Source: Mobula hypostoma (taxonomy: Eukaryota). From it: 64,000 bases of DNA. The position numbers and the translations under genes are program-made. The notes beneath the pieces are model-generated. The model had not been told where the DNA came from. It saw only the letters and a list, made by a program, of their open reading frames with translations, and searched no databases. The stretch lies in contig NC_086125.1 of NCBI RefSeq assembly GCF_963921235.1, forward strand, positions 7,936,001 to 8,000,000, written 5' to 3'. Below are positions 5,179 through 58,929 of this stretch, one piece after another (position 1 is the first letter of the stretch; each line of letters begins with the position of its first letter).

Positions 5179-5332
5179 GAGCATTCCACACTCTGCCAGA
5201 TTCTGCTCTAACTCCACTCATACCAGTGGTTCCCAGCTGGGGGTTCACGGACCCCTCAGTTAATGGTAGGGGTCTATGGCATCAAAAAGTTTGGGAACAC
5301 CTGACTAATAGGTTGCATAGTGGGCTGTATCT

Positions 5333-8200: not shown

Positions 8201-8456
8201 TGTAGCTATGGTGGTTCTTCTAGGAACATCTTGAAATAAATCCCTGTATTTAAAAATTAATTGTTTCATCTGCTCTCTCTGCTCTGGCTGGCAATGAGCT
8301 AATTTTTCATCAATATTTTCCAGAACTTCTGAGTTTGGTAATCCAGCTGAAATAACGTTGGGTTTAAAATGAATTTCAGATGAATCATCCATTAAGTTTT
8401 CAGTGGGATCAAATTCATTATTATTGACCACAACAGTCATAGTAGCATTTTGTTTC

Positions 8457-9440
8457 TCATAATACAGTTTTATCATATTTATATGACACAGCTGTGTTGG
8501 TTTTCTTCAATCTGGAGTTTTTAATCACGTAATCTACATCATTTACTTGGGATTTAATCTCATAAGGACCATGAAATTTAGCTTGTAATGGGTTTGTTTG
8601 CACTAGGAAAAGAACCAACACTTTATCTCCAGGTTTAAATGACCTCATCCTAGCTTCCTTATCATACCAAGTCTTCATCTTTTCTTGAATTGATTTTAAA
8701 TTTTCTTTGGCCAACCTACAAACTTTATGTAATCTTTCTTTAAATTTTAAAACATAATCCAGCAAATTAGTGTGTACCTCTTTATTAATCCACTGTTCCT
8801 TCAACAAGGCCAAAGGTCCTCGAACTCTGTGCCCAAACACAAGTTAAAAAGGACTAAAACCTAATGATTCCTGCACTGCCTCTCGTACTGCAAAAAGTAA
8901 TAAATGTACGCCTTCATCCCAATCCTTTTCATTTTCCACACAATATGTCCTCATCATATTTTTAAGGGTAGAATTTAATCTCTCCAAGGCTCCTTGTGAT
9001 TCTGGATGATATGCAGATGAGGCAATCTGTTTTGCTCCCAGTTTATAAACTATCTGCTGAAACAATCCAGACATAAAATTACTACCTTGATCCGATTGTA
9101 TTTCCTTAGGCAACCCAAAATAAGTGAAGAATTTTATAAGAACCTTTTTCACAGTTTTGGCTGTTATATTCCTAAGAGGTACTGCCTCTGGAAACCTAGA
9201 CTCTGTGCACATAATAGTTAATAAATATTGATGTCTAATTTTAGCTTTTGGCAAAGGACCTACACAGTCTACAATGATTTTTGAGAATGGCTCACCAAAT
9301 GCTGGAACTGGTTGCAGTGGGGCCACTGGAGTAACCTGATTAGGTTTACCCACAAGTTGACATGTATGACACGTTCTACAAAATGTCGCTACATCTTTTC
9401 TTAAACTAGGCCAGTAAAAATGTTCAGAAACCTTGTTCAT
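8457..9440 (-). pseudogene. Gypsy integrase (HHCC remnant, catalytic core, GPY/F module)
   Basis: FYWPSLRKDV..CRTCHTCQ, DCVGPLP, SDQGSNF, HPESQGALER, FKPGDKVLV..FHGPYEI. Confidence 0.92.
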
Positions 9441-9446
9441 AGTTTT

Positions 9447-9584
9447 CTTCCCTTTTTATACCCATGGTGAACATGTCATCACATGACCTCACATCGGCAG
9501 GAAATTACCTCAGGTGATCTCCAAAAAAAACCCATTACATCATTCTCACAAGAAAGTCACAAGATCTCCTTGAGGGACGTAACA
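9447..9584 (-). repeat. Truncated 5' LTR (first ~138 bp)
   Basis: Near-identical to 6582-6717; fused directly to the integrase coding sequence. Confidence 0.85.
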
Positions 9585-11230: not shown

Positions 11231-11466
11231 TTATGAGTGGTTATTGTTTAGAACTCCGTCTGAATTCACTTCTGTTAAAGGAAAAGATTCCTGATCAATC
11301 CCAGAAGGGGTTTCCTGATTGTTATGGGGTGCTGCATTCTGGACCACATAATGCCCTGTTTTCTGAGCTCTGTTTCTTAGGATGCAGACGATGACCAGCA
11401 CGACTAACAGTATTAGGATGAGTACCAAGATTACCAGCACCACCTTCCAAACATTATCTGGGGAAC
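11231..11466 (-). CDS. Exon 11: transmembrane helix, cytoplasmic tail and stop
   Basis: ttttgtgcag|GT TCC CCA; VVLVILVLILILLVVLVIVCIL then RNRAQKTGHYVVQNA (basic stop-transfer plus a VCAM-like KxGxY..A motif); TAA at 11233-11231. Confidence 0.92.
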
Positions 11467-14400
11467 CTGCACAAAAGCCATTACACAATCATTAACCATC
11501 TCAGGCAAATACATCAATTGTCAAACCACTAATCCTTCTGAGAATCCCGGAATCTTGCAGATTGCATGTACCTTACTGTTTACTCTCCCATGCTTTCTCA
11601 GATTTTCTAAAAAACACATACTACACATGAAACATTTTGACATGGTACTTCACAACCAATGAAAATCATTTCTGAGGAGTAATGACTGTGAAGGCCAAAT
11701 TTCACCCAGCAAGACCAGAAACAAACATGTGGCAACGCCATAATCTGCTTTAATAATGCTGATTGAGGGGCAAGTAGTGACCAGGATTCCATTGGAAACC
11801 ATCTGCTGTTCTTTGCGTTTGTCATTTTGTTTTAGCTACGAGCCTGAGAAAGCAGGCTGTTTAATCCCTCAGCTGGAAGGCAGCACCTCGGAGAGTGCTC
11901 CCTCAGGTTGGAAGCCCGTGATGAGCTGTGTGCCCAGGGTTCAGAGCTAGGCCCATTGCTGTTTGGTCAAGAACATACAGGGACATGTTTAGGAAGTTTG
12001 CAGATGACAAGAAGAATAGGTGGCATTATGGACAGTGAAGATGGTTATTGGGAATTACAGGGAAATCTTGATCAGCTACGTAAGTAGACAGAGGAATAGC
12101 AAATGGAGTTTAATTCAGATACGGAGGCAGGGTAACATTGTGGTTAGCACAGCGCTTTACAGGACCAGCAACCCAGGTTCAGTTCCTGCCGCTGTCTGTA
12201 AGGAGTTTGCATGATCCCACTGTGACCGTGTGTGTTTCCTCTGAGTTCCTCCCACAGTCCAAAGACGTACCAGCTGGTAGGTTAACTGGTCATTGTAAAT
12301 TGTCCTGTGATTAGGCTAGGGTTCAATCAGGGGTTGCTAGGCACCGCGGCTCAAAAGGCCGGAAAGGGCTGCTTCGTGCTGGAACTCAATCAATCAATAA
12401 GTGTGAGGTGTTGCATTTTGGAAAGTGAAGTTAGTGTAGGACTTTTCACAGTGAACGGCAGAGCCTTGCAGTGTGTTGTGGAACAGAGAGATCGAGGGAT
12501 CTCAGTTCCTTAAAGTGGTGTCACAGGCAGACAGTATGGTGACAAAGGCTTTTGGCACACTGACCTTCATCAGTCAGAGTATCGAGGGTGGCGGGTGTAC
12601 AGGATGTCAGTGGGGCCACATTTGGAATAGTTTTCCGTTCTGCTTGTCCTTCCATAGGAAAGATGTTGTCACCTTCACCCACATCTCCTGCATTTCCCGA
12701 ACATCTCCATCATCTCACCACCTTAACAGTGATCAGATCCGCTTGTCCTTACCCACAACGCCATGAGCCTCTGCATCCAACACATCATTCCCCTCAACAT
12801 CCGCCATCTCCAAAACGACCCTACTGCTAAACATATCGTTACCTCCTCACTCTCTCTGCAGAGATCAATCCCTCAGTGATTCCCTTCTCCATTTGTCCCT
12901 CCCCACTAAACTTTCTCCTGGCACATATCCCTGCAAGTGGCCAAAGTGCTACACCTGCCCATTCACATCCCCGCTCACCTCCATTCAGGGCCACAAACAG
13001 TCCTTCCAGGTGAGGCAACACGTCCCCTGTGAATCTGCTGGGTTGTCTATTCTGTCCGGGGCTCCCAATGTGACCTCTCCCACACTGATGAGATCCATCG
13101 TTCATTGGGGGACAGCTTTGTCGAGCACCTCCGCTCCATCTGTCAAGACCTTTTAATTCTGATTCCCATTCCCATTCATGTCCATCCATGGTCTCCATTG
13201 TTCCAAGATGAGGCCGCCCTCAGAGTGAAGGAGCATCACCTGGGTAGCCATTCCTCCTGGGTAGCCTCCAACCTGATGGCATGAATCTCGATTTCTCCTT
13301 CCGGTTCAAAAACATTCACTCCCACTTTCCTCTTTTGCTATTCCCTCCTGAGAGCCATTACCTCTTCTCACTTGCCTATCAGCTCCCCCTGGGTCTCCTC
13401 CTCGTTCCCTTTCTCCTGTGGTCCACCGTCTTCTATCGGATTCCTTCTTCCCCAGTCCTTCATCTTTCCCATCCACTTAGAATCACCTTTCACCATCTCT
13501 ATTATCCCTCCCCTCCACCCACCTTTTTAGTCTGGTTTCTTCCCCTTCCTTTTCAGGCCTGAAGAAGGGTGTCAGCCCGAAACGTAGACTGGTATGAACA
13601 GTGAAGAGGCCATTTACAAAGCAACACTGTTTGAGGCACAGATCTCAAAGCAAAACACTGCAGATGCTGAAAATCTGAAATAAATACACTAGAATGGGAA
13701 TACTTAGAAGTAAACAGGGTTAACCTTCCAGACCTTTCATTTGATCCAACTTGAAGCTCTGTTTCTCTGTTCCAAGATGCTGTTGGACCTGCTGAGTATC
13801 CCAACATTTTCTGTCTTCATTACTCTTAAAGGTAGTTTGCCCATTTCAACACACACAAAATGCAGGAGGAACTCAGCAGGCCAGGCAGAATCTGTGGAAG
13901 AGAGTAAACAGTCGATGTTTTGGACCGAGACCCTTCAATAGGACTCACGAAGGGACCTGATGAAGAGTCTCAGCCTGAAACATCGACTGTGTACTCTGTT
14001 CCACAGATGCTGCCTGGCCTGCTGAGTTCCTCCAGCACTTTGTGTTGTTGCTTTGGGTTTCCAGCATCTACAGACTTTCTCACGTTTGCCCATTTGCTCC
14101 TTTGCTGTTGGTGTGCAGAGGAATAGGGGAAAATAATGAATAACAGGATGTCAATCTCAGGAATCAGACAGAAGCTCAGTTTAACACCCCATCTGACAGC
14201 TGGTATGTCTGAGACTGCTTTCTCAGTACTGCTCAGGACACTAGCCTGGTTTTAATGCCCAAGATACTCAAGAGAGATTGAACCGCCAATCTCCCGACTC
14301 GAGGCAGGAGTACCATCCGACAAGTCACACGCAGTCTGATGTAGAGAGAGATTGTACACCTTTGTTTATCCTGGGCATGTCATAACTCTCAGCATTTACT

Positions 14401-17400
14401 GGTGATCACTCAGGGATGATATCTTGGCTCTGAAAGGGTTATTTATTTTCTCATCAATGCACTGTGACAAAGGTAACTTACTGACCTTCCAGCTTGATTT
14501 CCACTTGCTTCTCATCTGTTCCAAGTTTATTCCTGGCTCTACACTTGTAAATTCCTTGATGTTCTGATGTTGCCTGGGGAATGTGGAGAACCCCAGGAAG
14601 GTCGGTTTCCCCTGCGACTCCCTGACCGGGTCTTTCCCACGTCAGTGTTACCTGGGGGTTTCCACTGGAGTCACAGGTGATTGTAACTTCATCATCTACT
14701 CTGATGAAGACTGAAAACCCGGACACGGTTTTGTTATTTACTGATATAGTTGTGTTTTGTGGTTTATCTGGAAAAGAGTGAAAAGAGTGAAATTAACCAG
14801 CCCCTCCCATAGGACATAGAACAGTACAGCACGGGGTGGGCCCTTTGTCCCATGATGTTGTACCGACCTTTATAAACCTATTCCATCGACAACCCAACCC
14901 CTCCCTCCTGCACAGCCCATCGTCCTCCATTCTTCTTTCATTCACGTGCCTATCTAAGTCTCTTAAATGTCCCTTATATATCCGTCTCAACACCCACCCC
15001 TGACAGTGCAGTCCAGACACTTCCTACTGACTATGTAAAAACTTGCCTCTGACTCCGTGGCTCATCATAAAAGGATGTCCTCTGCTATAGTCATTACCCC
15101 CGGGGAATTACGTGCTGGCTGTCCACTCTTCCTACGTCTCTTACAATCTTACACAATCATCCTCCTTGGCTCCAAAGAGCTCACTCAACCTTTCCACAGA
15201 AGACATGCTCTCTAATCCAGGCAGCGTCCTGGTAAATCTCCCCTGCACCATTTCTAAAGCTTCTTCATTTTTCCTATAATGAGGTGACTGGACTTCACTA
15301 CACTGTGACTCCAAAAGGCTGGAAAATCGAATTTGACTGTGTGCTGAGCTCACTTCAGAGCAGCTGTGGTCAAAGTCCCGAGAGCCTTCAATCCAGAGTT
15401 CACTCTCAGTAAACAAACCATCTCGCTCTGCAATGAGCCCAGAACTCTCGTTGTCGTCAGGCTGAGAAACAACAGATTCTTTCGAGCCGCATGAGCTCCT
15501 TTTAACCAGAAGCATTTTAAGAGAGCCTTGTGCAGGGAGCAGTCCCACTGTCTGCTTCTCTGGTAGGGGGTGGGGGTGTGATTCACCACCAGGCCACAGT
15601 TTTCTCCAGGAAACACCAACCCTCATTCATGCCACAAGGTGAAGTATCTCAGCACTAACTCACTGTGTCCACTGTGGCTCATGGGAGCACCACCAGTCTT
15701 GTTTCAAACCGTTCTGGATTGAAGTTGTACGCCAGAGACTGGAGCACAATATCGAGGCCGGAGTGGTGGTGAACCTGTGGCATGTGTGCCCAGGATGGCA
15801 CAGGAAGAAACTTTGTTGGCATGCAGCAATGCCCCTCGATTCTTCTGATTTTTTCATTTATTTCAATGTCTCTGTTATACTTTTATTAATAGTAACTTAA
15901 TGAATGCACAAATTGTTACTTATGTGTAAATAACAATTACACATTGTAATAGAGTCAGAGAAAAGTACAGCACAGGAATAGGCCCTTCGGCCCATCTAGT
16001 CCATGCCAAAACTTTGTAAACGGCCTTCTCCCATCGACCTGCACCAGGACCATAGCCCTCCATATCCCTACCATCCATGAACTGATCCAAACTTTGCATA
16101 AACATTGAAGTCAAGCTTGTAAACATCACTTGTGCTGGCAGCTTGATCCACACCATCACGTCCCTCTAAGTGAAGAAAGTTCCCCTCATGTTTGCATTAA
16201 ACCTCACCTTTTACGCTAACCCCATGACCTCTGGTTGTAATCACTCCAACTTCAGTGGAAAAAGCCTGCTTGCATTTACCCTATCGACCCTTCATAACTT
16301 TGGATTCCTCCATACAATCTCTTCTCAACCTTCTATCTACAGAGTAATAAAGTCCCAGTCATAAATAAAGGTATTGACTCTAGAAAATAGGACTCATCCT
16401 TTTTCTTTCGTAGAGTTCATAACTATTTTAACTGATTTAGTAATCAATGATATCTATTAACCCCATCATGTCACTGCACTGAAAACACTTTAAGCCATTT
16501 TTGATAATGCTGTTCACATTGTAAATCCATGATTGTATTTAAATATTTATGCATGTTTTATTCCACATTCATGCTTTAAACTTTATCTTTGATATTATTC
16601 TCTTGTAGTGTTGAATGCTGTTGTACTTTGTCACAGTCACTCACTCACCAACACACCAGAGCAAATTCCTAATCCATATTGTGTATATGGTGAATGAAAT
16701 TGATCCCTGATAATCTCGGCACAAAATTACCATGGCACCCAACAGACATTTTTCAGAAGATCATCACCAGTTTAGACAGACGACCCCAAAAGGGTTTGTC
16801 ACCCCTCATTTCGGCTGACTTTACAGTGATGTTCTCAGGAGGTCCCACATTGACACAGTGCCGTCCTTTAACTCAGATATTAAGCTGAAGTTTCATTTTG
16901 TAGAGTTGCCATTCTGAAGAGGAACAGAATTCACCCTTGTGCCCTGGGCATATTTTGCTTCTGTTTTTGATCTGACTGTGTAATGATATTGTACAGACAG
17001 GGAATAAAGCAACTTATTCTGATCTCATGTCTTATGGTCTTATGGTCTATTCCACAAAGAAACCTCCTATACTTACACAAAATCTCTGCACGATGAGAGG
17101 AGTTGGTGGAACCAATATCATTGCGGACTCTGCACATGTACTGACCACTGTCTCCCAGTTGGACTGAGTGGATGTGCAGTGTCTCACCACTACTGATCGT
17201 TTTTCCATCTTTGATCCAGCGCACCTCCGGAACTGGGTTGGCATCTGCGCGACAGGTTAAAATCTGGGATTTCCCTTCAATCCAGTCCTGCTTTCCAGAG
17301 ATCTGTGCTTTCCTTGGAGAATCTGTAAAGTTGGTTAGAAATAGAAATTAAAAGCTGAAAGTTAAGAGCACAGAATCATTTCTTGGTGATTTTTGGTGCT

Positions 17401-20400
17401 GACCAAGTTCCACTTCTCAGAGTAGAGAGACTTTTACTTTAATAGCCTGTGCTACCACCAAGCACAGCAAGTCAAACACACTCGGTGGCCACTTTATTAG
17501 GTATACCTGAAGACCCCAGTTTGGTCTTCTGCTGCTGTAGCCCATCCTCTTCACAGTTCAACATGTTGTGCATTCAGAGATGCTCTTCTGCACACCACTG
17601 TTGTAACACCTGGTTATTTGAGTTCCTGTCACTTTCCTGTCAGCTTGAACCAGTCTGGCACTCTCCTCTGACCTCTCCTGTTAACAAGGTGATTTTGACC
17701 ACTGAAGCACCGCCTACTGGATAGTTTTTGTTTTTTGCACCAATCTCTGCAACTCCTTGTGCATGAAAATCTCTGGAGGTTGGCAGCTTGAGATACTCAA
17801 ACCACCCTGTCTGGCACCAACAATCATTCCATAGTCAATGTCACTTACATGCTAATGTTTGATCTAAATGTGACTAAACCTTTCCTATCCATGGACCTGC
17901 CCAAGTGCCTTTCAGACCATTTTGAGAGGACTCAAATATCAAAGCAAAGAGGTAATGTTAAGGCTTTATGAAGCACTGGTGAGGCCTCACGGAGTATTAT
18001 GAGCAGTTTTAGGCCCCTTATCTGAGAAAGGATGTACTGAAACTGGAGAAGGTACAAAGGAGGTTCACGAAAATGATTCCTGCGTTGAAAGGCTTGTCAG
18101 ATGAGGAGCTTTTGATGGGTCTGAACTCACTGGAATTCAATAAGATGAGGGGAATCTCATTGAAACCCATCGTATGTTGAACGGTCTCGATAGAGTGGAT
18201 TTGGAGAGGAGAGTGGCAGAGTCCAGGGCCAGAGGACACGGCCACAGAATAGAGGGGTGTCCTTTTCGAATGGGGATAAGGAAGAACTTCTTCAGCCAGA
18301 GAGAGGTGAATCTGTTGAATTTGTTGCCACAGACAGTTGTGGAGGCCAAGTCACTGGGTATATTTAAGGCGAAGGTTGATAGATTCTTGATTAGTTGCGG
18401 CGTGAAGGGATAAGGGGAGAAGGCAGGAGATTGAGGCTGAGAGGCAAAATGGATCAGCCATGATGAAATGACGGAGCAGACACAATGGGCCAAATGGCCT
18501 AATTCTGCTCCTATATCTTATGGTTTTTTAATTGTTATCAACATAGTTACTGAGGCTCTGTGATTTATCGACTCTTTTCCGTTTTATGTCTTTCATAATC
18601 TGTGTTTTTGCACGATCTTTCTTTATGCCGTATAAGTGATTTAATTTTGATGTTTGATCATCTTGTTGCCACTGTGCAACTTAAATTTGGCCCGATTTGT
18701 AAGTTTTTCATTGCGAGGGGGGTTGATGTTCTGGCAGTTCAGTGATTTGTTTTTCTGCATGGGGGAGGGAGGATTTGATGCTTGTTGCCGTTGCCATTGA
18801 AATTTGGGGAGATTTGTAAGTTCTGTTCTGTGGCATGAACGGCTTCCATATTTTACTTTGTTTCCTGCCTATCTGGAGAATACGAATCTCAGAGTCATGC
18901 TGCGTACATACTGTGATAATAAATGAACTTTTGAAACTTTTTCATCTGGTAGCTCATTCCATGTAACCTCTTGATGAAAATGTTGCTCCTTGGGTTCCTG
19001 TTGCTTCTCCCCCCTCTCAGCTTAAACCAATGCCTGCAATGGGATAAGCATCACAATCAATACCAGTACAGTATAACAGTTATCCCTAATGGAATTACTT
19101 TGTCATCTACTGAATAATTTGCTGAACTCTGTCAGGGGTTAACAACAGTAAGCTTCATGCCTGTAGTTGGCAGTGGTTCACATTTAGAACAGTGAAAGAT
19201 GTGCATTACAGCTTTAATGCCTGCTGAGCATTGGGAACTTCGTGCTTTTGAGGAGAGCTGAGGAAGTCTGCAGTTCATAGTGATCCCACAAGGTGGCAGT
19301 GCATCATGCATTTTGATATTGAGCTTCGCCTCTTTTAAACCTCCCTACACTGAGCCCATTTATTCCCTGAGATCCTCAAAGGAGAGAAAATGAGCATTGT
19401 TACTTCAATATTGGTAGAAATTGTATAATTCCAATACTCCCACCTTGGATATAGCAACAGAAAGGAAAGGTGAAAAGTTACAGACCAGATTTAATATCAC
19501 CGGTACAGCTCAGTGACGATTTGTTAACCGTAACGGCAGCAGAACAATGAAGCAGATTACCAATAATTATAAAGAAACAAAGCTGATTTACACCAACTAT
19601 ATATATTTATTTATATGTCTACTAAATAGTTAAATTAAAATAAGTAGTATCGAACAAAAAGTAGTGAGGTAGTGTTCATGGGCTCAATGTCATTTAGAAA
19701 TCAGATACCACCTTCTAGAAGTTTTGGGCAGGTATCAGAACCCATCCTGGACTTGGTTCAGGATCTCTTATTCCCTCGAACCTCTCCCCACTCCATGTTC
19801 TCTGGAACATCCAGCATTAGCCAAGCTGAGGTCCCGAGAAGTGCCTGACGAAGAGTTGATCTGAAATGTTAACTTGGACCGACTTGTGTGTTGCTAACGT
19901 TTTGTGTGTTTTGTTTCTGAAGCGTCCCAGTGCACCCGCACCTCTTCATTTGCTCCTTGAAAAGTCCTGTTGAACTGAGTCACAGGGACATAATGGACAG
20001 CCTCTGACTGTATTATCTGGAGTGTATGAGACTGAGAGCTGTTCTTATAAAGGTGTATAAAATCACAACCATTATCTCATGTTCTGGTTATTTATTGCTA
20101 TTTATTTCAATTTGTATTTGCACAGTTCATTGACGTCTGATTGATCCTGTTATGGTTACTATTCTGTGGATTTGCTGAGGATGCCCAGAGGCAAATGATC
20201 TCAGGGTTCTATGTGGTGACATGTATGAACTCTGATAGTAAATTTACTTTGAACTTTCAACACGAGGGCACATGTCCGAGATGAGTGGGAACATGAGACG
20301 AGTTTCTCTAGTTTGTGACAAGTTACAAAACCAGTTGTCACAGAATAGGGGAACTTCGGGTTCAGAAGGGAACGTACAAAGGACAGAGTTATGTTGACCT

Positions 20401-23400
20401 TTGTTATCAGGCTGGCCAGGTGACAGGAAACCTCGAGACGAAATGTTTCAGTGAGTTACAGTATCGCAACGTGGAAAGTTGACCAGGTACGCTCCATCCA
20501 CAAAGAGCAGAACAAAGCCAACACAATCATTTGGTGTTTGCTCCCTGACGTGGGAATACTGTATATTCCAGTTGTTCACCGGTTACTGAGTTACCAAAAG
20601 CTTTGCACAATTACCTTCACCAGACCGACGCCATTAGTTCACGAGAGAAACTTAGCAGCGCCATAAGGGAAATCAGAAACAGGTAACAGATGTTGGCCAT
20701 GTCAGTGTTGCCTGATTCCAAAGAAACGAATCGGCAAAACAAAAAATACAAGATTTTGATTGGGAAGGGTGAGGGGGGAGGGGGGTAGGTCAGGAAATGG
20801 AGTCGTTGGAGGTGGGGGTCACAGAGGGGTCGCAGGAGGTTGGGGGCAAAGAGCGGTCACGGGAGGGTCGGTCAGACAGGGGTCATGGGAAGGGGGTCAG
20901 AGAAGGCACGGGGAGTCAAAGAGGGGGCACTGAATGAACTCAGGCCTCACGCCGCGGGGTCACTTGCTTTTCCGCCGCTGGGGGTGAGGTGTCTGAGCCG
21001 TCATGAGCAGCACAGCGCTGTTGTGGTTGACTGAAGATTCCATTTGAACTGAGGGGTCTGGACTATATGCATATACATTTGTCTGCTTGTGTCTTTATTT
21101 TTTTTTGATATATTCCTCTATTTGTGAGGACTGGACCTCTACGCCACATATCGCCGTGCGGCCGTTGGGCATCAGGGCCAGTCGAAAGATGATCACAGTG
21201 ACTGGGGGTCTGGACTATACATGTGCATAATCTGTGTCGTTGCAATTTACTGATGTTCTGTATGGGTTTGTTGATCTGTACATGTAGGAACTGGGCATCA
21301 AACAGCGGTGATTCCGGGTGGGGGGGGGAGTGTGGGAGGCAAACCTGGACTCTTTCATTCGGTGAATGTGTTCTTGCGTGTGACTGCCGGTAATGTGTTT
21401 TAGCACCTTGGCCCCATTAGTAACGCTCTCTCGTTTGGCTGTACTCATCTGTGGTTGAATGACAATTAAACTTGAACTCAATTGAAGATGATTTGACTTG
21501 GTTCGGGTTTAGACAGAGCAAATAGTGATCAGGTGACCCTGTCAGTGGATAGTTGGAAGTCCCTCAAGTCAGAGTCCCAGGCAACCGTGGGGAGTTGAGC
21601 AGAACTCGTTCATGTGGAGTGTGTTTGTGAGGTGGAACTCTCTTCCTGAAGGCTGAGGGAGCAGAATCAATCAGGCTGAAGGATTGGCTCGAGGGAAAGT
21701 AGGTTGGAAGGCTAATGGGGGCTAAATGGATTAATTTGAAAAGAGCAGGGAGGGTCTTGATGGGCTGAATGGCCTCTGTTGTAATGATTCTAGGATATAA
21801 TTTTTATTTTATTTAGAGATATATTACGGTTACAAGCCATTCGGCATCTACAAGCCTGCACCACCCAATTACTCACATGTGACTACATATCTATGTCTAT
21901 GAAGGTGACTCTTTGGCAGCCGCTGCCTGTTCAATACTTGTTCCACTACACTCGCCAGGGTGGTTCCATTCATTGTATGAGCCCCACCCTCAAATGGATC
22001 GGGATTGAACACCATTGTCCAGCCCTCGGCCCACTCTCTTAGATAACCAGGATGACCCTGTAAGTTACTGATAACTCTTTACTGCCTACAATATCACTGG
22101 TACCATCTGCAAACTCACGCCTTCTCACACAAATATAAGTAATGAACAACAAAGATGCCATTGGCAGTCTCTGCGGGATACCATTAACCACAGGCCTTCA
22201 GCGAAGAAACAGGTTTCCACCATTTCCCTCTGCTTCCGACTGGCAAACCATTTGTGAATCCAGTTAACCATCTCTGCCCTGTCCCTCCTGACCACCATCC
22301 TCATGGTCTCCTCTTTGGAAAAACTCTAACCAATTTTTCAGTCAGGGTTTGCCACATACAGAGCCATGCTGATTCTCCCAAATCATAACTTGTCCATCCA
22401 AACCCCAGATTCCTATCCCGACACTGATGTCGGATGTGTTCCCTTATTATTTGTCATATTAACCCAGATTGGATGAATTGCTTTAATATTTCCTTCTAAT
22501 TAACCCTCAGCTAATTTAACATGGGACATGATGGTTAGCACAACACTTTACAGTACAGGCCAACGGGGTTTAATTCCTGCAACTGCCTGTAAGGATTCTG
22601 TACATTCTCCCTGTCACCGTGTGGGTCCCCTCCGGGTGCCCTGGTTTCCTCCCACAGTCCAAAGACATATCGGTTGGGAGGTTAATTGTTCATTATAAAG
22701 TGTCCCATGATCATGCTAGGGTTAAATCAGGGTATTACTGGGCAGTGAGGCTTAAAGGGCCAGAATGGCCTATTCTGTGCTGTATCTCAATAAATAAAAA
22801 TAAATATAACACAGTACAAAATAAAAATAAGATAACTCAGTACAGCCCTTCAGTCCATCTTGTGCACACTGACCATGATACCATTCTAACTGCCTGCACA
22901 TGGCCTGTGTCCCTCTATTCCCTGCCAGTCTAAATATTATTAAAAGTTAAATCATACCTGCTTCTGCGAGCACGTTCCAGGAAGCTACCACTCTCTATGC
23001 AACAAAAAATGACCTTGCACATCTTAAAGTCTTCACTCTGTCATTCACCCTTTCTCCCATCCCGCAAACGGTCAGGTCCGCATTGGGACCTTGCTGTGTG
23101 TGGACTGAGAATACTGCTCACCATTGTACAACAGGACACTAATGTACAATGGCCCCATGTGTCTCCACAGTACTGATGCATCAAAATAGGAGAAATGATT
23201 GATCCAGTTAAACACTCTCAAAGCAACACACACACAATGCTGGAGGGACTCAGCAGGTCAGGCAGCATCTATGGAAATGACATTTCAGGCCGAGACCCTT
23301 CTTCAGCACTGGAAAGGAAGGGGGAAGACTGCAGGACACTCCCGTAGTTTGAAGAGTTCTGTATGGAGTGGGAGGAGAGCTGGTTGTTCGTTCATCTGCA

Positions 23401-32400: not shown

Positions 32401-35400
32401 CACAGGGCTCATATGTCCAAGGATAAGCTAGCTTGTTTTTATTGCCATATAAATCTTGTTTGTGATAGATGTAATTCTGAGGTAGCTTCCTTGACATATA
32501 TGTTCTGGTCTTGTTCTCTTCCAGAAAAATATTGGAAAGATATTTTTGATATTATTTCAGTAGTTCTGCGTATTGACTTACAACCTCATCCTATTACTGC
32601 AATTTTTGGACTACCAGTGATAGACTCTAGTCATTTATACTTGTCAGCTTGTCGTCTAATTGCATTTGTTACATTAATAGCCAGAAGATCCATTATATTT
32701 AAATAGAAAGATTCTAATCCCCCCACTACATTTCAATGGTTTTACCAAACGATAGCATGCCTAAACTTGGAAAAAATTAGGAGTGGTACTATGGATCCTT
32801 TGGTTAAATTTGAAGAAACTTAGAGGCCATTTATTCAATATTTTCACATGATGTAAGTTGACCCTTTCTGGATCCTTTGCAGTAAGATTTTTGTTCATGA
32901 ATAGAGGAGTGGAGTTAACGACAAATAATAATTTTAGCTGATGTGGTATGACAGCCCCTGCTTTGTTTGTTTTTTTTTTAGTTTAGTTTTTTTTTCAGTT
33001 TAGGGGGCTTTCTTTTTCTTTAATTATAAAATATCTTTTTCATGGTCAGATACTATGAGATTGGGAGGTTAAACTATATTTGTTACTTGGAATCTGTGCT
33101 TGTACATGCTAATTGTTACTATTGTAATCCCAATCTCTATATATCATTACTATTCCTGTTATGTTTAATTTTGAAACTTAATAAAAAGATTGAAAAAGAA
33201 AGGATTTAAAGCCCAAGATACAAGAGAGGGATTGAACCTCCAATCTCCCAACTCGAGGCAGGAGCACCATCCGACGAGCAACACACCGTCTGGTGTGGAG
33301 AGAGATTGTACACCTTTGCTTATCCTGGGCACGTCATAACTCTCAGCATTTACTCGTGATCACACAGGGATGATATCTCTGCTCTGAAAGGGTTAATTAT
33401 TTATTTTCTCACCATGCACTGCGACCAAGGTAACTTACTGACCTTCCACCTTGATTTCCACTTGCTTCTCATCTGTTCCAAGTTTGTTCCTGGCTCTACA
33501 CTTGTAAATTCCTTGATGTTCTGATGTTGCCTGGGGAATGTGGAGAACCCCAGGAAGGTCGGTTTCCCCTGCGACTCCCTGACCGGGTCTTTCCCACGTC
33601 AGTGTTACCTGGGGGTTTCCACTGGAGTCACAGGTGATTGTAACTTCATCATCTACTCTGATGAAGACTGAAAACCCGGACACGGTTTTGTTATTTACTG
33701 ATATAGTTGTGTTTTGTGGTTTATCTGGAAAAGAGTGAAAAGAGTGAAATTAACCAGCCCCTCCCATAGGACATAGAACAGTACAGCACAGGGTGGGCCC
33801 TTTGTCCCATGATGTTGTACCAACCTTTATAAACCTATTCCATCGACAACCCAACCCCTCCCTCCTGCACAGCCCATCGTCCTCCATTCTTCTTTTATTC
33901 ACGTGCCTATCTAAGTCTCTTAAATGTCCCTTATATATCCGTCTCAACACCCACCCCTGACAGTGCAGTCCAGACACTTCCTACTGACTATGTAAAAACT
34001 TGCCTCTGACTCCGTGGCTCATCATAAAAGGATGTCCTCTGCTATAGTCATTACCCCCGGGGAATTACGTGCTGGCTGTCCACTCTTCCTACGTCTCTTA
34101 CAATCTTACACAATCATCCTCCTTGGCTCCAAAGAGCTCACTCAACCTTTCCACAGAAGACATGCTCTCTAATCCAGTTAGCGTCCTGGTAAATCTCCCC
34201 TGCACCATTTCTAAAGCTTCTTCATTTTTCCTATAATGAGGTGACTGGACATCACTACACTGTGACTCCAAAAGGCTGGAAAATCGAATTTGACTGTGTG
34301 CTGAGCTCACTTGTGCCTGGCAGCTCATTCCACACTGTCACAACTCCTCTGAGTGAAGAATGTTCCCCTCATGTTGACCTTAAACTTCTCAGCTTTCACC
34401 CCTACCTCATGACTTCTGGTTGTGACCCACCCAACCTCAATGGAAAAAGCCTGCTTACATTTACTCTAACAATACCCCTCATAATTTTGTATACCTCTAT
34501 ACAATTCTTCTCAATCGTCTACATTTAAGGAATAAACTCCTAGTAATAAATAAAGGTATTTATTACAGCATTTTTCCTTCCTGGAGTCTATAACTATTTT
34601 ACCTGATTTAGTAATCAATGATATCTATTAACCCCATCACGTTACTGCACTGAAAACACTTTAAACCATTTTTGATAATGTTGTTCACATTGTAAATCCA
34701 TGCGTGTATTTCAATATTTATGTAAGTTTTATTCCACATTCATGCTTTAAAATTTATTTTTATATAATTCTCTGTAAGTGTTGAATGTTGTGTATTTTGT
34801 CACAGTCACACACTCACCAACACACCAGAGCAAATCCCTAATCCATATTGTGTATATGGTGAATGAAATTGATCCCTGATAATCTCAGTGCAAAACTATG
34901 ATGGCACCCAACAGATATTTTTCAGAAGATTATCACCAATTTAGACACGCGACCCCCAAAGGGATTTGGCACCCCTCACTTAGGCTGACTTTACTGTGGT
35001 GTTCTGAGGAGGTCCCACATTGGCACTGTCACATTGGGGTGCTGGGAACGGACCCAAATGCAAGACACAGACTCTGAAGTACACGGAACAGGACTGGACT
35101 GGAGTAGGGACGTGACAGGATACAGGCAAGGAGCAGGGACAAGAACGCAGACTTGGGCTAGGGAAAGCGGGACCAGGACTAGGAACCATGGACTAGGTGA
35201 CAAGGCTTGGACTGCGAGCCTGAGACTGGACAAGGACCCAGAACCTAGGTCTTGCCTCGGGCTCGGACCCCAGAACCGGGCAAGGACATGACATAGGTGC
35301 TCCCGATGTGGCCTTTTATATATTGGCGAGACCCGACGCAGACTGGGAGACCGCTTTGCCGAACACCTACGCTCTGTCCGCCAGAGAAAGCAGGCCACAC

Positions 35401-38400
35401 ATTTTAGTTCCACATCCCATTCCCATTCTGACATGTCTATCCACGGCCTCCTCTACTGTAAAGATGAAGCCACACTCAGGTTGGAGGAACAACACCTTAT
35501 ATTCCGTCTGGGTAGCCTCCAACCAGATGGCATGAACATCGACTTCTCTAACTTCCTCTAATGCCCCAACCCCCCCGCCATACCCCATCTGTTACTTATT
35601 TTTATACACACATTCTTTCTCTCACTCTCCTTTTTCTCCCTCTGTCCCTCTGAATATACCTCTTGCCCATCCTCTGGGTCACCCCCCCCCTTGTCTTTCT
35701 TCCCGGACCTCCTGTCCCATGATCCTCTCGTATCCCCTTTTGCCTATCACCTGTCTAGCTCTCGGCTCTATCCCTCCCCCTCCTGTCTTCTCCTATCATT
35801 TTGGATCTCCCCCTCCCCCTCCCACTTTCAAATCTCTTACTCACTCTTCCTTCAGTTAGTCCTGACGAAGGGTCTCGGCCTGAAATGTCGACTGCACCTC
35901 TTCCTGGAGAAGCTGCCTGGCCTGCTGCGTTCACCAGCAACTTTTATGTGTGTGTTGAATGATGAAAGGCCTCGATAGAGTGGATTTGGGGAGGAAAGTG
36001 GCAGAGTTTAGGGCTAGAATGGAGAGATGAGGAAGTGAGGGGGGTTGGGAGTTGATGTTCTCACAAATCACAGATTTGTTTTACCACCTGGGATTGGCGT
36101 GGGGAGGTTTAAATGCTCGTTACCGTTGCCATTTAAACTGGGGTGATTTGTCAGCTTTCTGTGTTGGGGGCGTGGTTTGAAGAGCTTCCATATTTTTCAT
36201 TGTTTCCTGGCTATCTGGAGAAGACGAATCTCAGAGTTATATACTTCATAATAAATGAACCTTTGCATCTTGATTTGCATTGAATCGAATTAACTTTATT
36301 CCTTACATCCTTCATATATATGAGGAGTAACAATCTTTATGTTATGTCTCTGTCTGAACGTGCAATGTGCAGTTTATAGTAATTTATAATAAATAGTGTG
36401 TACAACAGGATAGTCAATATAAGATAGAAATACAGTTGTGTCAGCATAAGTTAAGCAGTCTGATGGCCTGGTGGAAGAAGCTGTGTTAGGGTGATGACGT
36501 CTCTGTAGGCTGCCTCATTATCATTATTTGAGATTAAGCCAAGCAGTGTAGTGTCATCAGAAAATTTAATTAGCAGTTTGGAGCTGTGGGTGGTGACACA
36601 GTCATGGGTATACAGAGAGTAAAGGAGAGTAAAAATCTTTTTCGTCTGGTAGCTCATTCCATTTAGCCTCTAGATGAAAAGGTGCCTCTCAGGTTCCTGT
36701 TGCATCTTCCCCCTCTCAGCTTAAACCAATGCCTGGGAGAAGCATCACAATCGATACCAGTACAGTCTAACAGTGGCTGTGTTATCCCTAATATTGTCAT
36801 CTACTGAGTCATTTGCTAAGGGTTAACAGCAGTAAGCTTCATGCCTGTAGTTGGCACTGATTCACATTTAGAACAGAGAAAGATGTGCATTACAGCTTTA
36901 ATGCCTGCTGAGCATTGGTAACATCCTGCTTTTGAGGAGAGCTGAGGAAGTCTGCAGTTCATAGTGATCCCACAAGGTGGCAGTGCATCATGCATTTTGA
37001 TATTGAGCTTTGCCTCTTTTAAACCTCCCTACACTGAGCCCATTCATTCACTGAGATCCTCAAAGGAGAGAAAATGAGCATTGTTACTTCAATATTGGTG
37101 GAAATTGTATAATTCCAATACTCCCACCTTGGAAATAGCAACAGAAAGGAAAGGTGACAAGTTACAGATCAGAATCAGAATCAGATTTAATATCACAGGT
37201 ATAGCTCAAAAACGATTTGTTAACTTTACGGAAGCAGAACAACGAAACAGATTACCAATAAATATATAGAAGGAAAGCTGAATTACACCAAATATATATA
37301 TATGTCTATTAAATAGTTAAATTAAAGTTAGTAGTGCAGAATAAAAAGTAGTGAAAGTGTTCAGGTTCAATGTCATTTAGAAATCAGGTACCACCTTCTA
37401 GAAGTTTTGGGTAGATAGCAGAACCCATCTTGGACTGGATTCAGGATCTCTTATTTCCCCAAACCTCTCCCTACTCCATGCTCTCTGGAACACCCGGCAT
37501 TAGCCAACCTGAGGTCCCCAAAAGTGCCTGACGAAGAGTCAAAAGCCTGAGTAAAACTCAACAGCCTTTAGTGTTGATAACAAGATCACTTACACTGGAC
37601 ATCGAGAGTGGCTGACTGTCGTTTAACAATGGTGTTGGAGCGATGGTGAAGTGTCAGCTCGGCCTCACAGGTGAACTGCTGTCCATTCAGCTCTGCTCGT
37701 GGATTCACAGTGTGGTAGATAGTCAGCCCAGTACTGGCTGACCTGCTCACTGATATCTCACTTCCCTTCTTCAGTCTGAGTTGAAGTTCCCCTGAGATGT
37801 TAAACACACTGCAGGTAATATTCACTGGAATTCCCTCAGTGGTGATCGGGATTTGGATTTCAGGGTTGGAGAAAACTGTAACAACAGAGAACATTGTCAG
37901 AAACTTTCTCTGAGTGAGTTCTGCAGCCCTTCTGTACCACTAGACTGAGGTAGTCAACCTTAAGCACAAATGATTTACTAGCATGCATTATTCATTAATT
38001 TGAGGAAAAGCATAACAAGATGTATTTAAATGCGTAATTCCCATGTTTCAAGTTTTTATGGCATTTATCTGTCCCACCGTCTGCTCATTAATACGCGATC
38101 TTACCCACAGAGGCAAAAACCCCTGACCCCTGCACTAGACTGAGGTAGCAAATGGAACTCTTTTGAAGTCTGTCTGTGGTACAGCACCCACCTCCCTCAC
38201 TGTGTGTCTAGTGGCTAAAGAAGGTGCTGCAGGAATTATCAAAATCCCCCCCCCCCCCGCCACAGTTCCCAGCATCATTCACTGCTGACCCAATCTCATC
38301 AAAGCAAACGACACATTGGTTCAGTGCATCCGACAGAGTGGAACTTTGCAGCACACACACACACATATACACACACGTAAACACACACATATACACACAG

Positions 38401-41400
38401 ATTTATTTACAACATCTTTGAGTCTGAGCAATCCTGGTAAACGTATCATTCACCATCACAACAGGGTTGACTTAGCTAGTAACCAGCCAGTGGTTTCTCA
38501 GTCATTTCAGATGGCACTTTGCCTTCGAAGCAATGGTAAATAATCCACAGAATTAATTTCTTGGGTATGAAACACACACAGACACAGACACACACACACA
38601 CACACAATATCTAATTGCAACTTATAGATTATTTTATGTATTGCGCTGTACTGCTGCCACAAATCAACAAAATTCACAGCGCATATCAGTAATGATAAAC
38701 TGATTCTGATTTAACTTTGCTGCAAACTTCTGTCTCCTTTCTATCTAATGATACGTTTGCTGGCAGCCTTAGATTCCACATTCAGTTTCTATCTCTGACA
38801 AATTCAATTGCCGGTCGCTGCTTCTGCAACACAATCTTATCCTGGTACACAGATTTCCGAATGGATGTACACTACCTCAGTATTTGATTTTTTGCTCTCT
38901 TTTTGCAATACCATGCAGATATATATATCTTATTGTAATTTATAATTTGTTCTCGTTCTTCTACATGACACTGTACCGCTGCTGCAAAACAATACATTTC
39001 ATGACATGTGCCAATGGTGTTGAACCAGATTCTGATTAATGTCCAGGCTTAGTCTCATGCTCCATGGAACCTGCTCCATTGATAAACCCATGGCTAAATA
39101 ACTACATCTGATTCAAAGATTCAAAGGTTCATTTTATTGTCAATGTTTGTATGCAGAATACATCTCTCACATTCGTCTTCTCCAGATAGCCATGACATTC
39201 AGAAAAACTGTGGGAGTTGTTGAAAGAAAGGATGTTGACCACCTCCCATCCACCCCTCCCCACATGAAAAGGAAATCTGCTCCGTGTTGCTGCCAGTAGA
39301 CTGTTTAGGAGCAGGTGGGAAACTCTGAAAGATTACTGTCTAGTCAAAGTGCTCAATTATCCAGCATGCTTACCGTACACATTAATGGCAATGCTATCAT
39401 TCTTTGATGAAACTGATGGATAGTCCTCAAAATCTGCCATGCATTTCAGTTCAGTCACACCGGTCTCTCGTGGTGTCCATGTAGCTGTTGCCTGGAGTGT
39501 GGTGGGATTTGATCTACTGGCAACTGAATTCCATTCCTCACCATCCTGAAACCACCTTAATCTCACCTTCTCAGCAGGGTAGATGTTTGAGACCTCACAC
39601 GTCAATGTGGTCTCCTGATTTACTTCTACAGAGTCTCTGTTGAGGATCCTTGGAGGCTCTGGAAAAGCTGCAATACACACAAGAAATTCACTGCACATTG
39701 GTTTGCCTTGGCCTGTTTCAGATACGGATGGAATGATGCAAAACTGACCAAACCCCTATAAGCCTCTGTACACAACCAGGAGTTCATCAAACCCACGTCG
39801 GTATCAGCAGGTTGCATACTATGCTCTTCCTCTGACTCTTCCTGCTCTTCAGGCATCCCAAAAATCTAACTCTTTGCTCCTCCCGTGGGCAGTGATACAG
39901 GAGTAAACTCTCACTGACTTATCAAGAGTGTGGTCTCAGTGAGCAGCTAGTTTGGGGTGGCACGGTAGTGTAGTGGTTAGCACAACGCTTTACAGTGCAG
40001 GTGATCCATGTTCAATTCCCGATGCTGCCTGTAAGGAGTTTGTACATTTTCCTGTGACCGTGTGGATTTCCTCCGACAGTCCAAAGACGTACTGGTTGGT
40101 GGGTGAACTGGTCATTGTAAAATATAGTGTGATTAGGCTCGGGTTAAAATGGTGGATTGGTGGGCAGCGTGACTCGAAGGGCTGGGAGGGCATATTCTGC
40201 ATTGCAGTCTTTCAATCTATTTTGTTCTGCCCGTACTGGCCCAAGAGAAGGGCTGATCCCTAAAGAATGGTCATAAAGAAAACTTTAGGCACATTTGCCT
40301 TCATAAATCCAAGTACTGAGTACAGGAGATGGAACATTATGTTGAAGTTTTATTAGGCATTGGTGAAGCCTAATTTGGAGTACTTTATACTTTATACTTT
40401 ATTGTCACCAAACAATTGATACTAGAATGTACAATCATCACAGCGATATTTGATTCTGCACTTCCCGCTCCCTGGATTACAAAGATTAAATATTTAAAAT
40501 ATTTAAAATAGTAAAAATTAGTAAATATTAAACATTTAAATTATAAATCATAAATAGAAAATAGGAAAATGGAAAGTAAGGTAGTGCAAAAAATCCGAGA
40601 GGCAGGTATTGTGTGTAGTTCTGGTCACCTACCTATTGGAAAGATGTAAATGAGGTTGAAAAAGTACAGATAAAATTTACAAGGATTTTGCAAACAACAG
40701 GAATTCTGCAGATGCTGGAAATTCAAGCAACACACACAAAAGTTGCTGGTGAACACAGCAGGCCAGGCAGGACCTGACGAAGGGTCTTGGCCTGAAACGT
40801 CGGCTGCACCTCTTCCTAGAGATGCTGCCTGGCCTGCTGCGTTCACCAGCAACTTTTTATGTGTGTTACAAGGATTTTGCCCTGGATTGCAGGACCTGAG
40901 TTATGTGGGAAGATTGAATAGGTTAGGACTTTATTCCTTGGAAAGCCGTAGACTAAGAGGAGATTTCATAGAGTTACACAAAATTATGAGGGGCAAGCTT
41001 TTCCCACAGAGGTTGGGTGGGACTGCAACTGGAGGTCATGGGTTAAGGGTGAAAGGTGAAAAGTTCATTGGGAAAACGAGAGGAAACTTCTTCGTTCAAA
41101 TGGCTGTGAGAATGTGGAATGAGCTGCCAGTGCAAGTGGTGCATGTGAGCTCGATTTGAACATTTAAGAGAAGTTAGGATAGGTACATGGATGGTAGGAG
41201 TATGGAGGGCTGTGGTGCTGATGCAGATTGATGGGAGCAGGTAGATTAAATGGTTCAGCACAAACTAGGTGGGCTGTACTTTTCTATGACTCTGTCTATT
41301 ACCACCACCTGCACTGACCACCAAGAGGGACATGGGAGTATCAGGTAAGTGTGCAGAATTTGCAGGAGTTTGGAATTGTTTCAGTGACCTTCAGCCAAAT

Positions 41401-58860: not shown

Positions 58861-58929
58861 CAGACATGATAGAACCAGTTTACAGAGTGTATAAGATTTC
58901 TAAACCTGTTTTTTTTGATGAGATACAGT

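What the first reader, a model, noticed from the sequence alone, without database searches (positions are those of the whole stretch)
13940..39838. Ectodomain extended by a ~13 kb intragenic tandem duplication
The cassette D3-D4-Dx-D5 is present twice with colinear introns. By hand count D3/D6 differ at ~10 of 98 aa and D4/D7 at ~5 of 94 aa. The implied history is a 6-Ig ancestor, then 10 Ig, then 9 Ig after one exon loss. Because every exon is phase 1, the duplication was in frame at birth, and exon skipping could tune receptor length.
Basis: partly seen in the sequence, partly recalled or inferred. Interest (0 to 1): 0.78.

Follow-up and report, generated by a model that had tools for sequence, protein, structure and literature searches.

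The report
Ray adhesion gene with doubled Ig-exon cassette
A devil-ray cell-adhesion gene of the ICAM/VCAM family really does carry a tandem, in-frame repeat of a block of antibody-like exons that lengthens its outer part from six to nine domains, but this is an ordinary way for such genes to grow and the gene is already modelled in RefSeq.

Summary
Window 13940-26700 and 26711-39838 are two adjacent, colinear, same-strand copies of a ~13 kb unit. They lie inside one minus-strand gene of 11 coding exons (45280-11231).

My spliced model is identical to RefSeq XP_062891894.1, "vascular cell adhesion protein 1-like" of Mobula hypostoma (947 aa, nine Ig domains). All Ig exons are phase 1-1 with AG/GT sites. 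D3/D6 differ at 10 of 97 residues, D4/D7 at 5 of 93 and D5/D9 at 1 of 93.

The I-set exon Dx (17322-17077) has no copy or relic in the 5' unit.

An assembly artefact is very unlikely:
- background intron divergence between the units is 12-14%;
- each unit carries its own insertions with target-site duplications, including a 6.2 kb L1-type LINE;
- the window has no N.

The six-Ig layout D1-D2-D3-D4-Dx-D5 is the common one in sharks and rays, so a six-Ig ancestor is well supported.

The exact route is not settled. The two cassettes are not clearly each other's closest relatives (AU p = 0.09). The nearest M. birostris protein also has a different repeat layout. A fusion of neighbouring paralogues remains possible.

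This is a new member of a known kind, of modest interest. Other first-reader notes already cover parts of this window.

The parts
45214..45280 (-). Exon 1 (coding part): start codon, signal peptide, phase-1 donor
   Evidence: tblastn of the N-terminus of P0041; the sequence was read directly, with ATG at 45280 and GT at 45213-45212
42118..42384 (-). D1 exon, ICAM_N-type N-terminal Ig domain (single copy, not part of the repeat)
   Evidence: Pfam PF03921 at 31.4 bits, above the cut-off of 21; splice sites; a Glu in the motif L/V-E-Y-K-P-G is conserved across the family
41599..41910 (-). D2 exon (single copy)
   Evidence: Splice sites; D1-D2 together align to ICAM-2, ICAM-5 and VCAM-1 D1D2 structures
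26711..39838 (-). Repeat unit 2 (5' copy in the gene): exons D3 39667-39374, D4 37875-37594 and D5 33724-33443; the Dx exon is absent
13940..26700 (-). Repeat unit 1 (3' copy in the gene): exons D6 26530-26237, D7 23733-23452, Dx 17322-17077 and D9 14767-14486
   Evidence: The AlphaFold model of D6-D9 has mean pLDDT 86.7 and four all-beta domains. The best rigid-body matches are ICAM-1 D3-D5, with target-normalised TM 0.63-0.65
26701..26710 (.). Junction between the units: about 10 nt matching neither edge, with no shared homology
   Evidence: Three-way comparison of the junction with both outer edges
13853..14045 (.). Inverted repeat (90-nt arms, 87% complementary, 13-nt spacer). Its centre is the outer edge of unit 1; only the right arm was copied to the junction
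27033..33201 (+). L1-type LINE inserted only in unit 2, in the D5-D6 intron 320 bp from the junction. It has an A-rich 3' end and a target-site duplication of about 13 bp
   Evidence: Empty site in unit 1 at 14248-14263; ORFs with Exo_endo_phos, RVT_1 (7.7e-23) and zf-RVT
37954..38132 (.). A 179-bp insertion only in unit 2, flanked by a perfect 16-bp direct repeat
35029..35959 (.). Segment of unit 2 that stands where the Dx exon should be. It is not homologous to unit 1 16859-18174 and is made of sequence repeated elsewhere in the window
   Evidence: Self-BLAST links it to 13058-13297, 13956-14050 and 52029-52328
14486..15355 (.). Low-divergence tract (about 1%) around D9/D5; the matching tract in unit 2 is 33443-34312. 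This is probable gene conversion
   Evidence: Divergence profile: exon 0.7%, 14768-15355 1.0%, against 10-14% on both sides
23413..24061 (.). Low-divergence tract (1-2%) around D7/D4; probable gene conversion
11231..11466 (-). Last coding exon: transmembrane segment, 48-residue cytoplasmic tail, stop codon
   Evidence: identical to the C-terminus of P0041

Best explanation
The feature is a real, fixed, in-frame tandem repeat of an Ig-exon cassette inside one type I membrane gene of the ICAM/VCAM integrin-ligand family. The gene is Mobula hypostoma XP_062891894.1.

Most likely history (inferred):
- The ancestor was a six-Ig gene, D1-D2-D3-D4-Dx-D5-TM.
- One non-homologous exchange joined a point 546 bp downstream of the last Ig exon, at the centre of a 90-nt-arm palindrome, to a point 171 bp upstream of D3 in intron 2.
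- This duplicated D3-D4-Dx-D5. Because all Ig exons are phase 1-1, the ten-Ig product was in frame at once.
- Afterwards the 5' copy lost about 1 kb holding Dx.
- Each copy collected its own retroelement insertions.
- Short gene-conversion tracts centred on the exons kept D4/D7 and D5/D9 nearly identical, while the intron background drifted to 12-14% divergence.

Likely function (inferred): the single D1-D2 head, with its family-wide conserved Glu, is the ligand-binding end. The repeat adds three domains to an ICAM-1 D3-D5-like stalk, so the head stands further from the membrane.

What is shown: the repeat, the exon structure, the identity with the RefSeq model, the divergence profile, the insertions and the family architectures.

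What is inferred: the order of events, the mechanism of the break, and the function.
For: Repeat and junction. Palindrome at the outer edge. Exons, phases and splice sites. Spliced model identical to P0041 = XP_062891894.1, with a gene span of 34,050 bp in both. Domain families: ICAM_N on D1, ICAM1_3_5_D2 on D3 and D6, I-set on Dx, D5 and D9. Six-Ig A-B-C-E-X-F architecture in Pristis, Narcine, Hemitrygon, Hypanus, both Mobula species, Heptranchias, Heterodontus, Chiloscyllium and Hemiscyllium. Intron divergence of 12-14% with tracts of 1-5% around the exons, and exonic pS of only 0.03. Unit-specific LINE and 179-bp insertions with target-site duplications. Dx absent from unit 2. D1D2 matches ICAM-2 (9e-11), ICAM-5 and VCAM-1 structures. 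Conserved Glu motif. Cassette model at pLDDT 86.7, closest in shape to ICAM-1 D3-D5.
Against: The two cassettes are not recovered as sisters. D6D7 is closest to a paralogue of the same genome and D3D4 to a M. birostris protein (AU p = 0.088 against their union). The M. birostris protein that shares this gene's D1 deletion has a different internal repeat. If the 12-14% intron divergence dates the duplication, the event should predate the split of the two Mobula species and be shared by them. No read or transcript evidence could be obtained, and no DNA of other Mobula loci. The integrin-binding motif is only partly conserved (Glu yes, the rest no).
Confidence: 0.55

Rival explanations
1. Fusion of two paralogues, or a larger older repeat trimmed later. 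The two cassettes would come from two neighbouring six-Ig paralogues, or from a bigger D2-to-D5 duplication. A deletion then removed the intervening TM, leader and D1-D2 exons (or the D2' exon). The present 26700/26711 junction would be a deletion scar, and the 12-14% divergence would date the paralogues rather than the joining.
For: D6D7, Dx and D9 are 95-97% identical to the six-Ig paralogue XP_062891799.1 of the same genome, closer than D6 is to D3. D1-D3 are closest to M. birostris XP_072104449.1, which carries the same 4-residue D1 deletion but reads A-B-C-E-B'-C'-E'-F, with B' only 77% identical to its own B. Other family members look like end-to-end joins of whole units, for example A-B-F-A-B-C-E-X-F in Carcharodon and A-B-C-E-A-B-C-E in M. 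birostris. The gene sits in a cluster of ICAM-like genes; this comes from scan notes and is unchecked.
Against: It needs more steps than one duplication. No relic of TM, leader, D1 or D2 exons lies between D5 and D6; apart from the LINE, that intron is only about 730 bp. The protein tree is a near-polytomy and the AU test does not reject sisterhood at 0.05. Gene conversion between paralogues could equally produce the observed similarities. Gnomon models of tandem paralogues can be read-through chimeras.
Confidence: 0.3
2. Assembly artefact: two haplotypes or a collapsed/expanded repeat were stitched in tandem, so the animal has only one cassette.
For: The junction lies next to repeated sequence.
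Against: The units differ by 12-14% in intron background, by a 6.2 kb LINE, by a 3.5 kb insert, by several smaller insertions with target-site duplications, and by a whole exon. That is far beyond allelic difference. The window has no N or gap. The junction joins two different introns precisely and keeps the frame.
Confidence: 0.03
3. Two transcription units: the 5' part (leader to D5) would be a secreted five-Ig product and the 3' part a separate gene, so the nine-Ig protein would exist only as a prediction.
For: XP_062891894.1 is a computed model. No transcript fragment containing the D5-D6 join was found among 5.8 billion proteins.
Against: There is no leader exon, D1 or D2 in front of D6 and no TM or stop-containing exon after D5. 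The D5 donor is identical to the D9 donor, and the D6 acceptor has a good polypyrimidine tract and AG. Both copies keep open frames, cysteines and splice sites despite 12-14% neutral divergence.
Confidence: 0.04

Closest known systems
Mammalian VCAM-1 (seven-Ig form, with six-Ig splice form)
   Same: It is an IgSF integrin ligand with one Ig domain per phase-1 exon. Its ectodomain contains an internal repeat (domains 1-3 resemble 4-6; from my own knowledge of the gene). Skipping of one Ig exon gives VCAM-6D versus VCAM-7D (PMC2119261, abstract). RefSeq names the ray gene 'VCAM-1-like'. VCAM-1 D1D2 structures match the ray D1D2 at E 1.7e-7.
   Different: In VCAM-1 the repeat includes the ligand-binding D1-type domain, giving two VLA-4 sites in D1 and D4 (PMC2120002, abstract). 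In the ray gene only stalk domains are repeated and there is a single ICAM_N domain. The best solved match is ICAM-2, not VCAM-1. Orthology was not tested.
ICAM-5 (telencephalin) and ICAM-1
   Same: The D1 is of ICAM_N type. D3/D6 match the ICAM1_3_5_D2 family. ICAM-5 D1D2 matches at 5.7e-8. ICAM-5 also has nine Ig domains (own knowledge). The modelled D6-D9 cassette superposes best on ICAM-1 D3-D5 (target-normalised TM 0.63-0.65).
   Different: Sequence identity is low (about 20-27%). The nine domains of the ray protein arise from a recognisable recent cassette repeat, not from nine old, distinct domains.
Other elasmobranch ICAM/VCAM-like genes with repeated cassettes (RefSeq models)
   Same: They use the same domain alphabet (A=D1, B=D2, C=D3, E=D4, X=Dx, F=D5) and the same habit of repeating blocks. 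Examples are A-B-C-E-C-E (M. hypostoma, Hypanus), A-B-C-E-C-E-C-E (Hemitrygon), (A-B)x3-F (Scyliorhinus) and A-B-F-A-B-F-F-F-F-F-F (Cetorhinus).
   Different: Only this gene has D5 followed by a D3-type domain (an F-to-C join) among the 87 relatives retrieved. The repeated block here is C-E-(X)-F.

Membership tests
ICAM/VCAM/MAdCAM integrin-ligand IgSF family | N-terminal ICAM_N-type Ig domain with four cysteines (C-x3-C ... C-x3-C) | tested here: met
   PF03921 at 31.4 bits, above the gathering cut-off of 21. The cysteine pattern is conserved in all 23 aligned D1 domains.
ICAM/VCAM/MAdCAM integrin-ligand IgSF family | D1-D2 module similar to solved ICAM or VCAM D1D2 structures | tested here: met
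   phmmer against PDB: ICAM-2 9.2e-11, ICAM-5 5.7e-8, VCAM-1 1.7e-7. The alignments span both domains.
ICAM/VCAM/MAdCAM integrin-ligand IgSF family | Acidic integrin-binding residue in the conserved motif of D1 (I/L-D/E-S/T-P/S-L; PMC2120002 abstract and own knowledge) | tested here: inconclusive
   A Glu is invariant 8 residues after the second Cys, in L/V/M-E-Y-K-P-G, across sharks and rays. The rest of the motif differs, and HMMER places the Glu one to two positions off the ICAM-2 Glu.
ICAM/VCAM/MAdCAM integrin-ligand IgSF family | Type I membrane protein with one Ig domain per phase-1 exon and a short cytoplasmic tail | tested here: met
   Leader exon, nine phase 1-1 Ig exons and one TM-plus-tail exon of 77 codons.
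ICAM/VCAM/MAdCAM integrin-ligand IgSF family | Binds a leukocyte integrin | not testable with these tools
   This needs a binding or adhesion assay.
VCAM-1 orthologue (the name given by RefSeq) | Internal repeat that includes a second D1-type, integrin-binding domain (D4) | tested here: not met
   Only one ICAM_N domain is present. tblastn with D1 finds no second copy inside the gene.
VCAM-1 orthologue (the name given by RefSeq) | VCAM-1 is the closest characterised relative | tested here: not met
   ICAM-2 and ICAM-5 score better than VCAM-1. Relatives in other species are named ICAM-1-like, ICAM-5-like or VCAM-1-like without pattern.
VCAM-1 orthologue (the name given by RefSeq) | Conserved synteny with the tetrapod VCAM1 locus | not tested
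   Flanking genes lie outside the window and no DNA of the record was served.
Intragenic tandem exon-cassette duplication | Two adjacent colinear copies, same orientation, abutting within introns of one gene | tested here: met
Intragenic tandem exon-cassette duplication | Both copies are spliced into one mRNA | tested here: inconclusive
   Splice sites and frame are intact and RefSeq models one 947-aa product.
Intragenic tandem exon-cassette duplication | The two copies are each other's closest relatives | tested here: inconclusive
   The protein tree of D3D4-type pairs is a polytomy. Constraining the two copies together costs 10.3 lnL (AU p = 0.088). Intron DNA of the paralogues was not available.

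The most novel reading that the evidence does not exclude
The ray and shark ICAM/VCAM-like cluster may be a fast 'accordion' of interchangeable Ig-exon cassettes. Repeated illegitimate joins between introns of the same or neighbouring genes, followed by exon-centred gene conversion, would make receptor length and domain order differ even between congeneric species. Here, M. hypostoma has A-B-C-E-F-C-E-X-F while M. birostris has A-B-C-E-B-C-E-F, in genes that share a D1 deletion. This gene would be one snapshot of that process. Regulated skipping of the phase-1 exons could add further length variants.
Probability: 0.25. Interest if true: 0.5.

Novelty: new member of a known kind. Interest (0 to 1): 0.3.

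Why it matters
The locus is a clean, datable example of how IgSF adhesion receptors grow by in-frame repeats of phase-1 exon cassettes. It preserves a junction, a palindrome at one breakpoint, post-duplication retroelement insertions, loss of one exon, and gene-conversion tracts that keep exons alike while introns drift. It also shows that the elasmobranch ICAM/VCAM-like family varies strongly in domain number and order, which matters for anyone using RefSeq names ('VCAM-1-like') to infer leukocyte-adhesion biology in cartilaginous fish. It does not reveal a new kind of mechanism.

Tried and rejected
No DNA reads across 26700 and no RNA reads could be examined, and read laying was not used.
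- Transcript fragments: a search with D5+D6 (P0041:409-600) for short proteins carrying the D5-D6 join found only single-domain matches in sharks.
- DNA of related loci: the look-up of encoding contigs for the M. birostris relative, for the gene itself and for the paralogue XP_062891799.1 returned gene spans but no DNA. Intron-level orthology and the presence of the junction in M. birostris could not be tested.
- Alternative splicing in relatives: shark 'isoform X1/X2' pairs that differ by exactly the 82-residue Dx block are only 86-89% identical elsewhere. They are different genes, not splice forms, so they give no support for exon skipping.
- Selection: pN/pS between the copies is about 0.8, but it rests on 22 differences, which is too few to argue selection.
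- Literature: three full-text searches found nothing on ICAM/VCAM genes of cartilaginous fish.
- Scan notes: a look-up by the sequence of the paralogue found nothing.
- Rejected reading: I do not read the match of 1-1146 to 62856-64000 as evidence for a 62.9 kb tandem unit. The matching stretch consists of LINE-type ORFs and is cut by both window ends.


Full report
**Observation.** A self-comparison of the window shows ten colinear, same-strand blocks linking 13940-26700 to 26711-39838. Identities run from 74% to 99.6%. The two units abut. Homology to the outer right edge (39838) stops at 26700, and homology to the outer left edge (13940) starts at 26711. About 10 nt in between match neither edge.

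**Gene anatomy.** The gene is on the minus strand.
- Exon 1 runs from the ATG at 45280 to 45214 and encodes the leader.
- Nine Ig exons follow: D1 42384-42118, D2 41910-41599, D3 39667-39374, D4 37875-37594, D5 33724-33443, D6 26530-26237, D7 23733-23452, Dx 17322-17077 and D9 14767-14486.
- A last exon, 11466-11231, carries the membrane span, a 48-residue tail and the stop codon.
- Every Ig exon has a length divisible by three, is phase 1-1, and has a polypyrimidine tract with AG and a GT donor.
- Pfam places D1 in ICAM_N, D3 and D6 in ICAM1_3_5_D2, and Dx, D5 and D9 in I-set/Ig_2/Ig_3. D2, D4 and D7 give only weak Ig hits.
- Dx has no second copy and no relic at tblastn E<=10.

**Identity.** A search of 1.8 billion representatives with D1, followed by a word-indexed search, led to P0041. 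Its residues 24-947 are identical to my spliced model. It is XP_062891894.1, "vascular cell adhesion protein 1-like", from Mobula hypostoma assembly GCA_963921235.1. Its gene span of 34,050 bp equals 45280-11231. The nine-Ig gene is therefore already modelled. RefSeq lists one product and no isoforms.

**What happened after the repeat arose.**
- Aligned block by block, the intron background differs by 12-14% (13940-14485, 16126-16859, 18718-19898) and by 8% in 24810-25823.
- Three tracts that each contain an exon pair are much closer: 14486-15355 at about 1%, 23413-24061 at 1-2% and 26237-26700 at 4-5%.
- Synonymous difference in the exons is only 0.03. The likeness of the exons is therefore due to gene conversion rather than to protein-level constraint alone.
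- Unit 2 carries a 6.2 kb element (27033-33201) with endonuclease, RVT_1 and zf-RVT ORFs and an A-rich 3' end. It is flanked by a duplication of about 13 bp of a site that is empty in unit 1.
- A 179-bp insertion at 37954-38132 has a perfect 16-bp duplication.
- Unit 1 has its own inserts at 15355-16126, 19898-23413 and 24061-24810.
- Where unit 1 has Dx (16859-18174), unit 2 has 930 bp of unrelated, repeated sequence (35029-35959). The introns on both sides remain homologous.
- The outer edge of unit 1 lies at the centre of an inverted repeat with 90-nt arms, and only its right arm is present at the junction. This is a plausible fragile site.
- Together these features exclude a haplotype-merging artefact for practical purposes.

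**Family context.** I labelled domains by their best match to the window's exons: A=D1, B=D2, C=D3/D6, E=D4/D7, X=Dx, F=D5/D9.
- The layout A-B-C-E-X-F occurs in Pristis, Narcine, Hemitrygon, Hypanus, both Mobula species, Heptranchias, Heterodontus, Chiloscyllium and Hemiscyllium. A six-Ig ancestor is therefore well founded.
- The family also holds many other block repeats: A-B-C-E-C-E, A-B-C-E-C-E-C-E, A-B-C-E-A-B-C-E, (A-B)x3-F and A-B-F-A-B-F-F-F-F-F-F.
- Only this gene shows F followed by C.
- Forms lacking exactly the 82-residue X block exist, but they are separate genes, not splice forms.

**Is it one intragenic duplication?** For this genome alone, one exchange between intron 2 and the last Ig-TM intron, followed by loss of Dx, is the shortest story. 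Three results argue for caution.
- D3D4 is nearest to M. birostris XP_072104449.1 (94%), and D6D7 is nearest to the six-Ig paralogue XP_062891799.1 of the same genome (95%). The window's Dx and D9 are 96% and 95% identical to that paralogue.
- Holding the two cassettes together costs 10.3 log-likelihood units (AU p = 0.088). This is not a rejection, but it is no support either.
- The M. birostris protein shares a 4-residue deletion in D1 with this gene and has a similar gene span of 35.2 kb. Yet it reads A-B-C-E-B'-C'-E'-F.

If the 12-14% intron divergence dates the event, it should predate the split of the two Mobula species. The different layouts would then need later rearrangement. Alternatively, the cassettes came from already diverged neighbouring paralogues that were fused by deletion. 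Without DNA of those loci I cannot decide. I put about 0.55 on the intragenic duplication and 0.3 on the fusion or larger-repeat route.

**How it probably works.**
- D1-D2 align over both domains to ICAM-2 (9e-11), ICAM-5 and VCAM-1.
- A Glu eight residues after the second D1 cysteine is invariant in all 23 elasmobranch D1 domains aligned. It lies near the position of the integrin-binding Glu/Asp of ICAMs and VCAM-1 (PMC2120002 abstract; own knowledge). The rest of the motif differs, so integrin binding is an inference.
- The model of D6-D7-Dx-D9 is confident (pLDDT 86.7, four beta-sandwich domains). It superposes best on the ICAM-1 D3-D5 stalk (target-normalised TM 0.63-0.65).
- Since the repeat excludes D1-D2, its likely effect is a longer stalk carrying one binding head. 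This is unlike mammalian VCAM-1, where the repeat adds a second binding domain (PMC2120002) and where skipping one Ig exon gives six- and seven-domain forms (PMC2119261).
- Exon skipping in the ray gene is possible in any combination because of the uniform phase, but nothing here shows it.

**Limits.** The literature searches found no description of these genes in cartilaginous fish.

**Verdict.** Its evolutionary reading is plausible but not unique. The phenomenon is of a well-known kind in an already annotated gene. Other first-reader notes on this window cover the gene, the junction, the conversion tract and the Dx loss, and my tests agree with them.

Noticed in passing
window 1-1146 and 62856-64000: The two window ends are 98.5% identical over 1146 bp on the same strand, and the match is cut by both ends. 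The stretch carries LINE-type ORFs on the minus strand (one has a weak hit to PF09004, ALKBH8_N). I read it as two young LINE copies, but a larger 62.9 kb repeat cannot be excluded from this window alone.
   Followed up: partly
window 61825-61920 (-): A 32-residue stretch is 44% identical to the second half of D1 (pairwise E 4e-07). It lies 16.5 kb upstream of exon 1, next to LINE sequence, and has no Pfam hit. It may be a relic of a D1 exon of a lost or neighbouring family member.
   Followed up: partly
window 13853-14045: A near-perfect palindrome (90-nt arms, 87% complementary, 13-nt spacer) sits exactly at the outer edge of the repeat unit. A similar sequence recurs at 35861-35957.
   Followed up: partly
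window 27033-33201 (+): This L1-type LINE still has long ORFs (276, 414, 324 and 141 aa) for endonuclease, reverse transcriptase and zf-RVT. It is AT-rich (about 31% GC) compared with its surroundings.
   Followed up: partly
window 3629-3846, 12123-12397, 22526-22806, 39953-40216, 48490-48636, 58909-59195: Six copies, in both orientations and 70-78% alike, of a repeat of about 250 bp. It is probably a SINE-like element. One copy lies in the unit 1-specific insert.
   Followed up: no
window 47906-48537 and 4592-5181: Two minisatellites, with period 37 (about 15 copies, up to 98% alike) and period about 44 (about 13 copies).
   Followed up: no
window 6918-9455 (-): Long ORFs whose translations read, by eye, like reverse transcriptase and integrase of an LTR retroelement. 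They lie downstream of the gene. This was not checked against Pfam.
   Followed up: no
P0038 (M. birostris XP_072104449.1) against P0041: The closest protein from the congeneric species shares a 4-residue deletion in D1 with this gene but has a different internal repeat (D2'-D3'-D4' instead of D5-D6-D7-Dx). Likewise, P0040 (M. hypostoma, A-B-C-E-C-E) and P0037 (M. birostris, A-B-C-E-A-B-C-E) are 88-99% identical domain by domain but differ in layout.
   Followed up: partly
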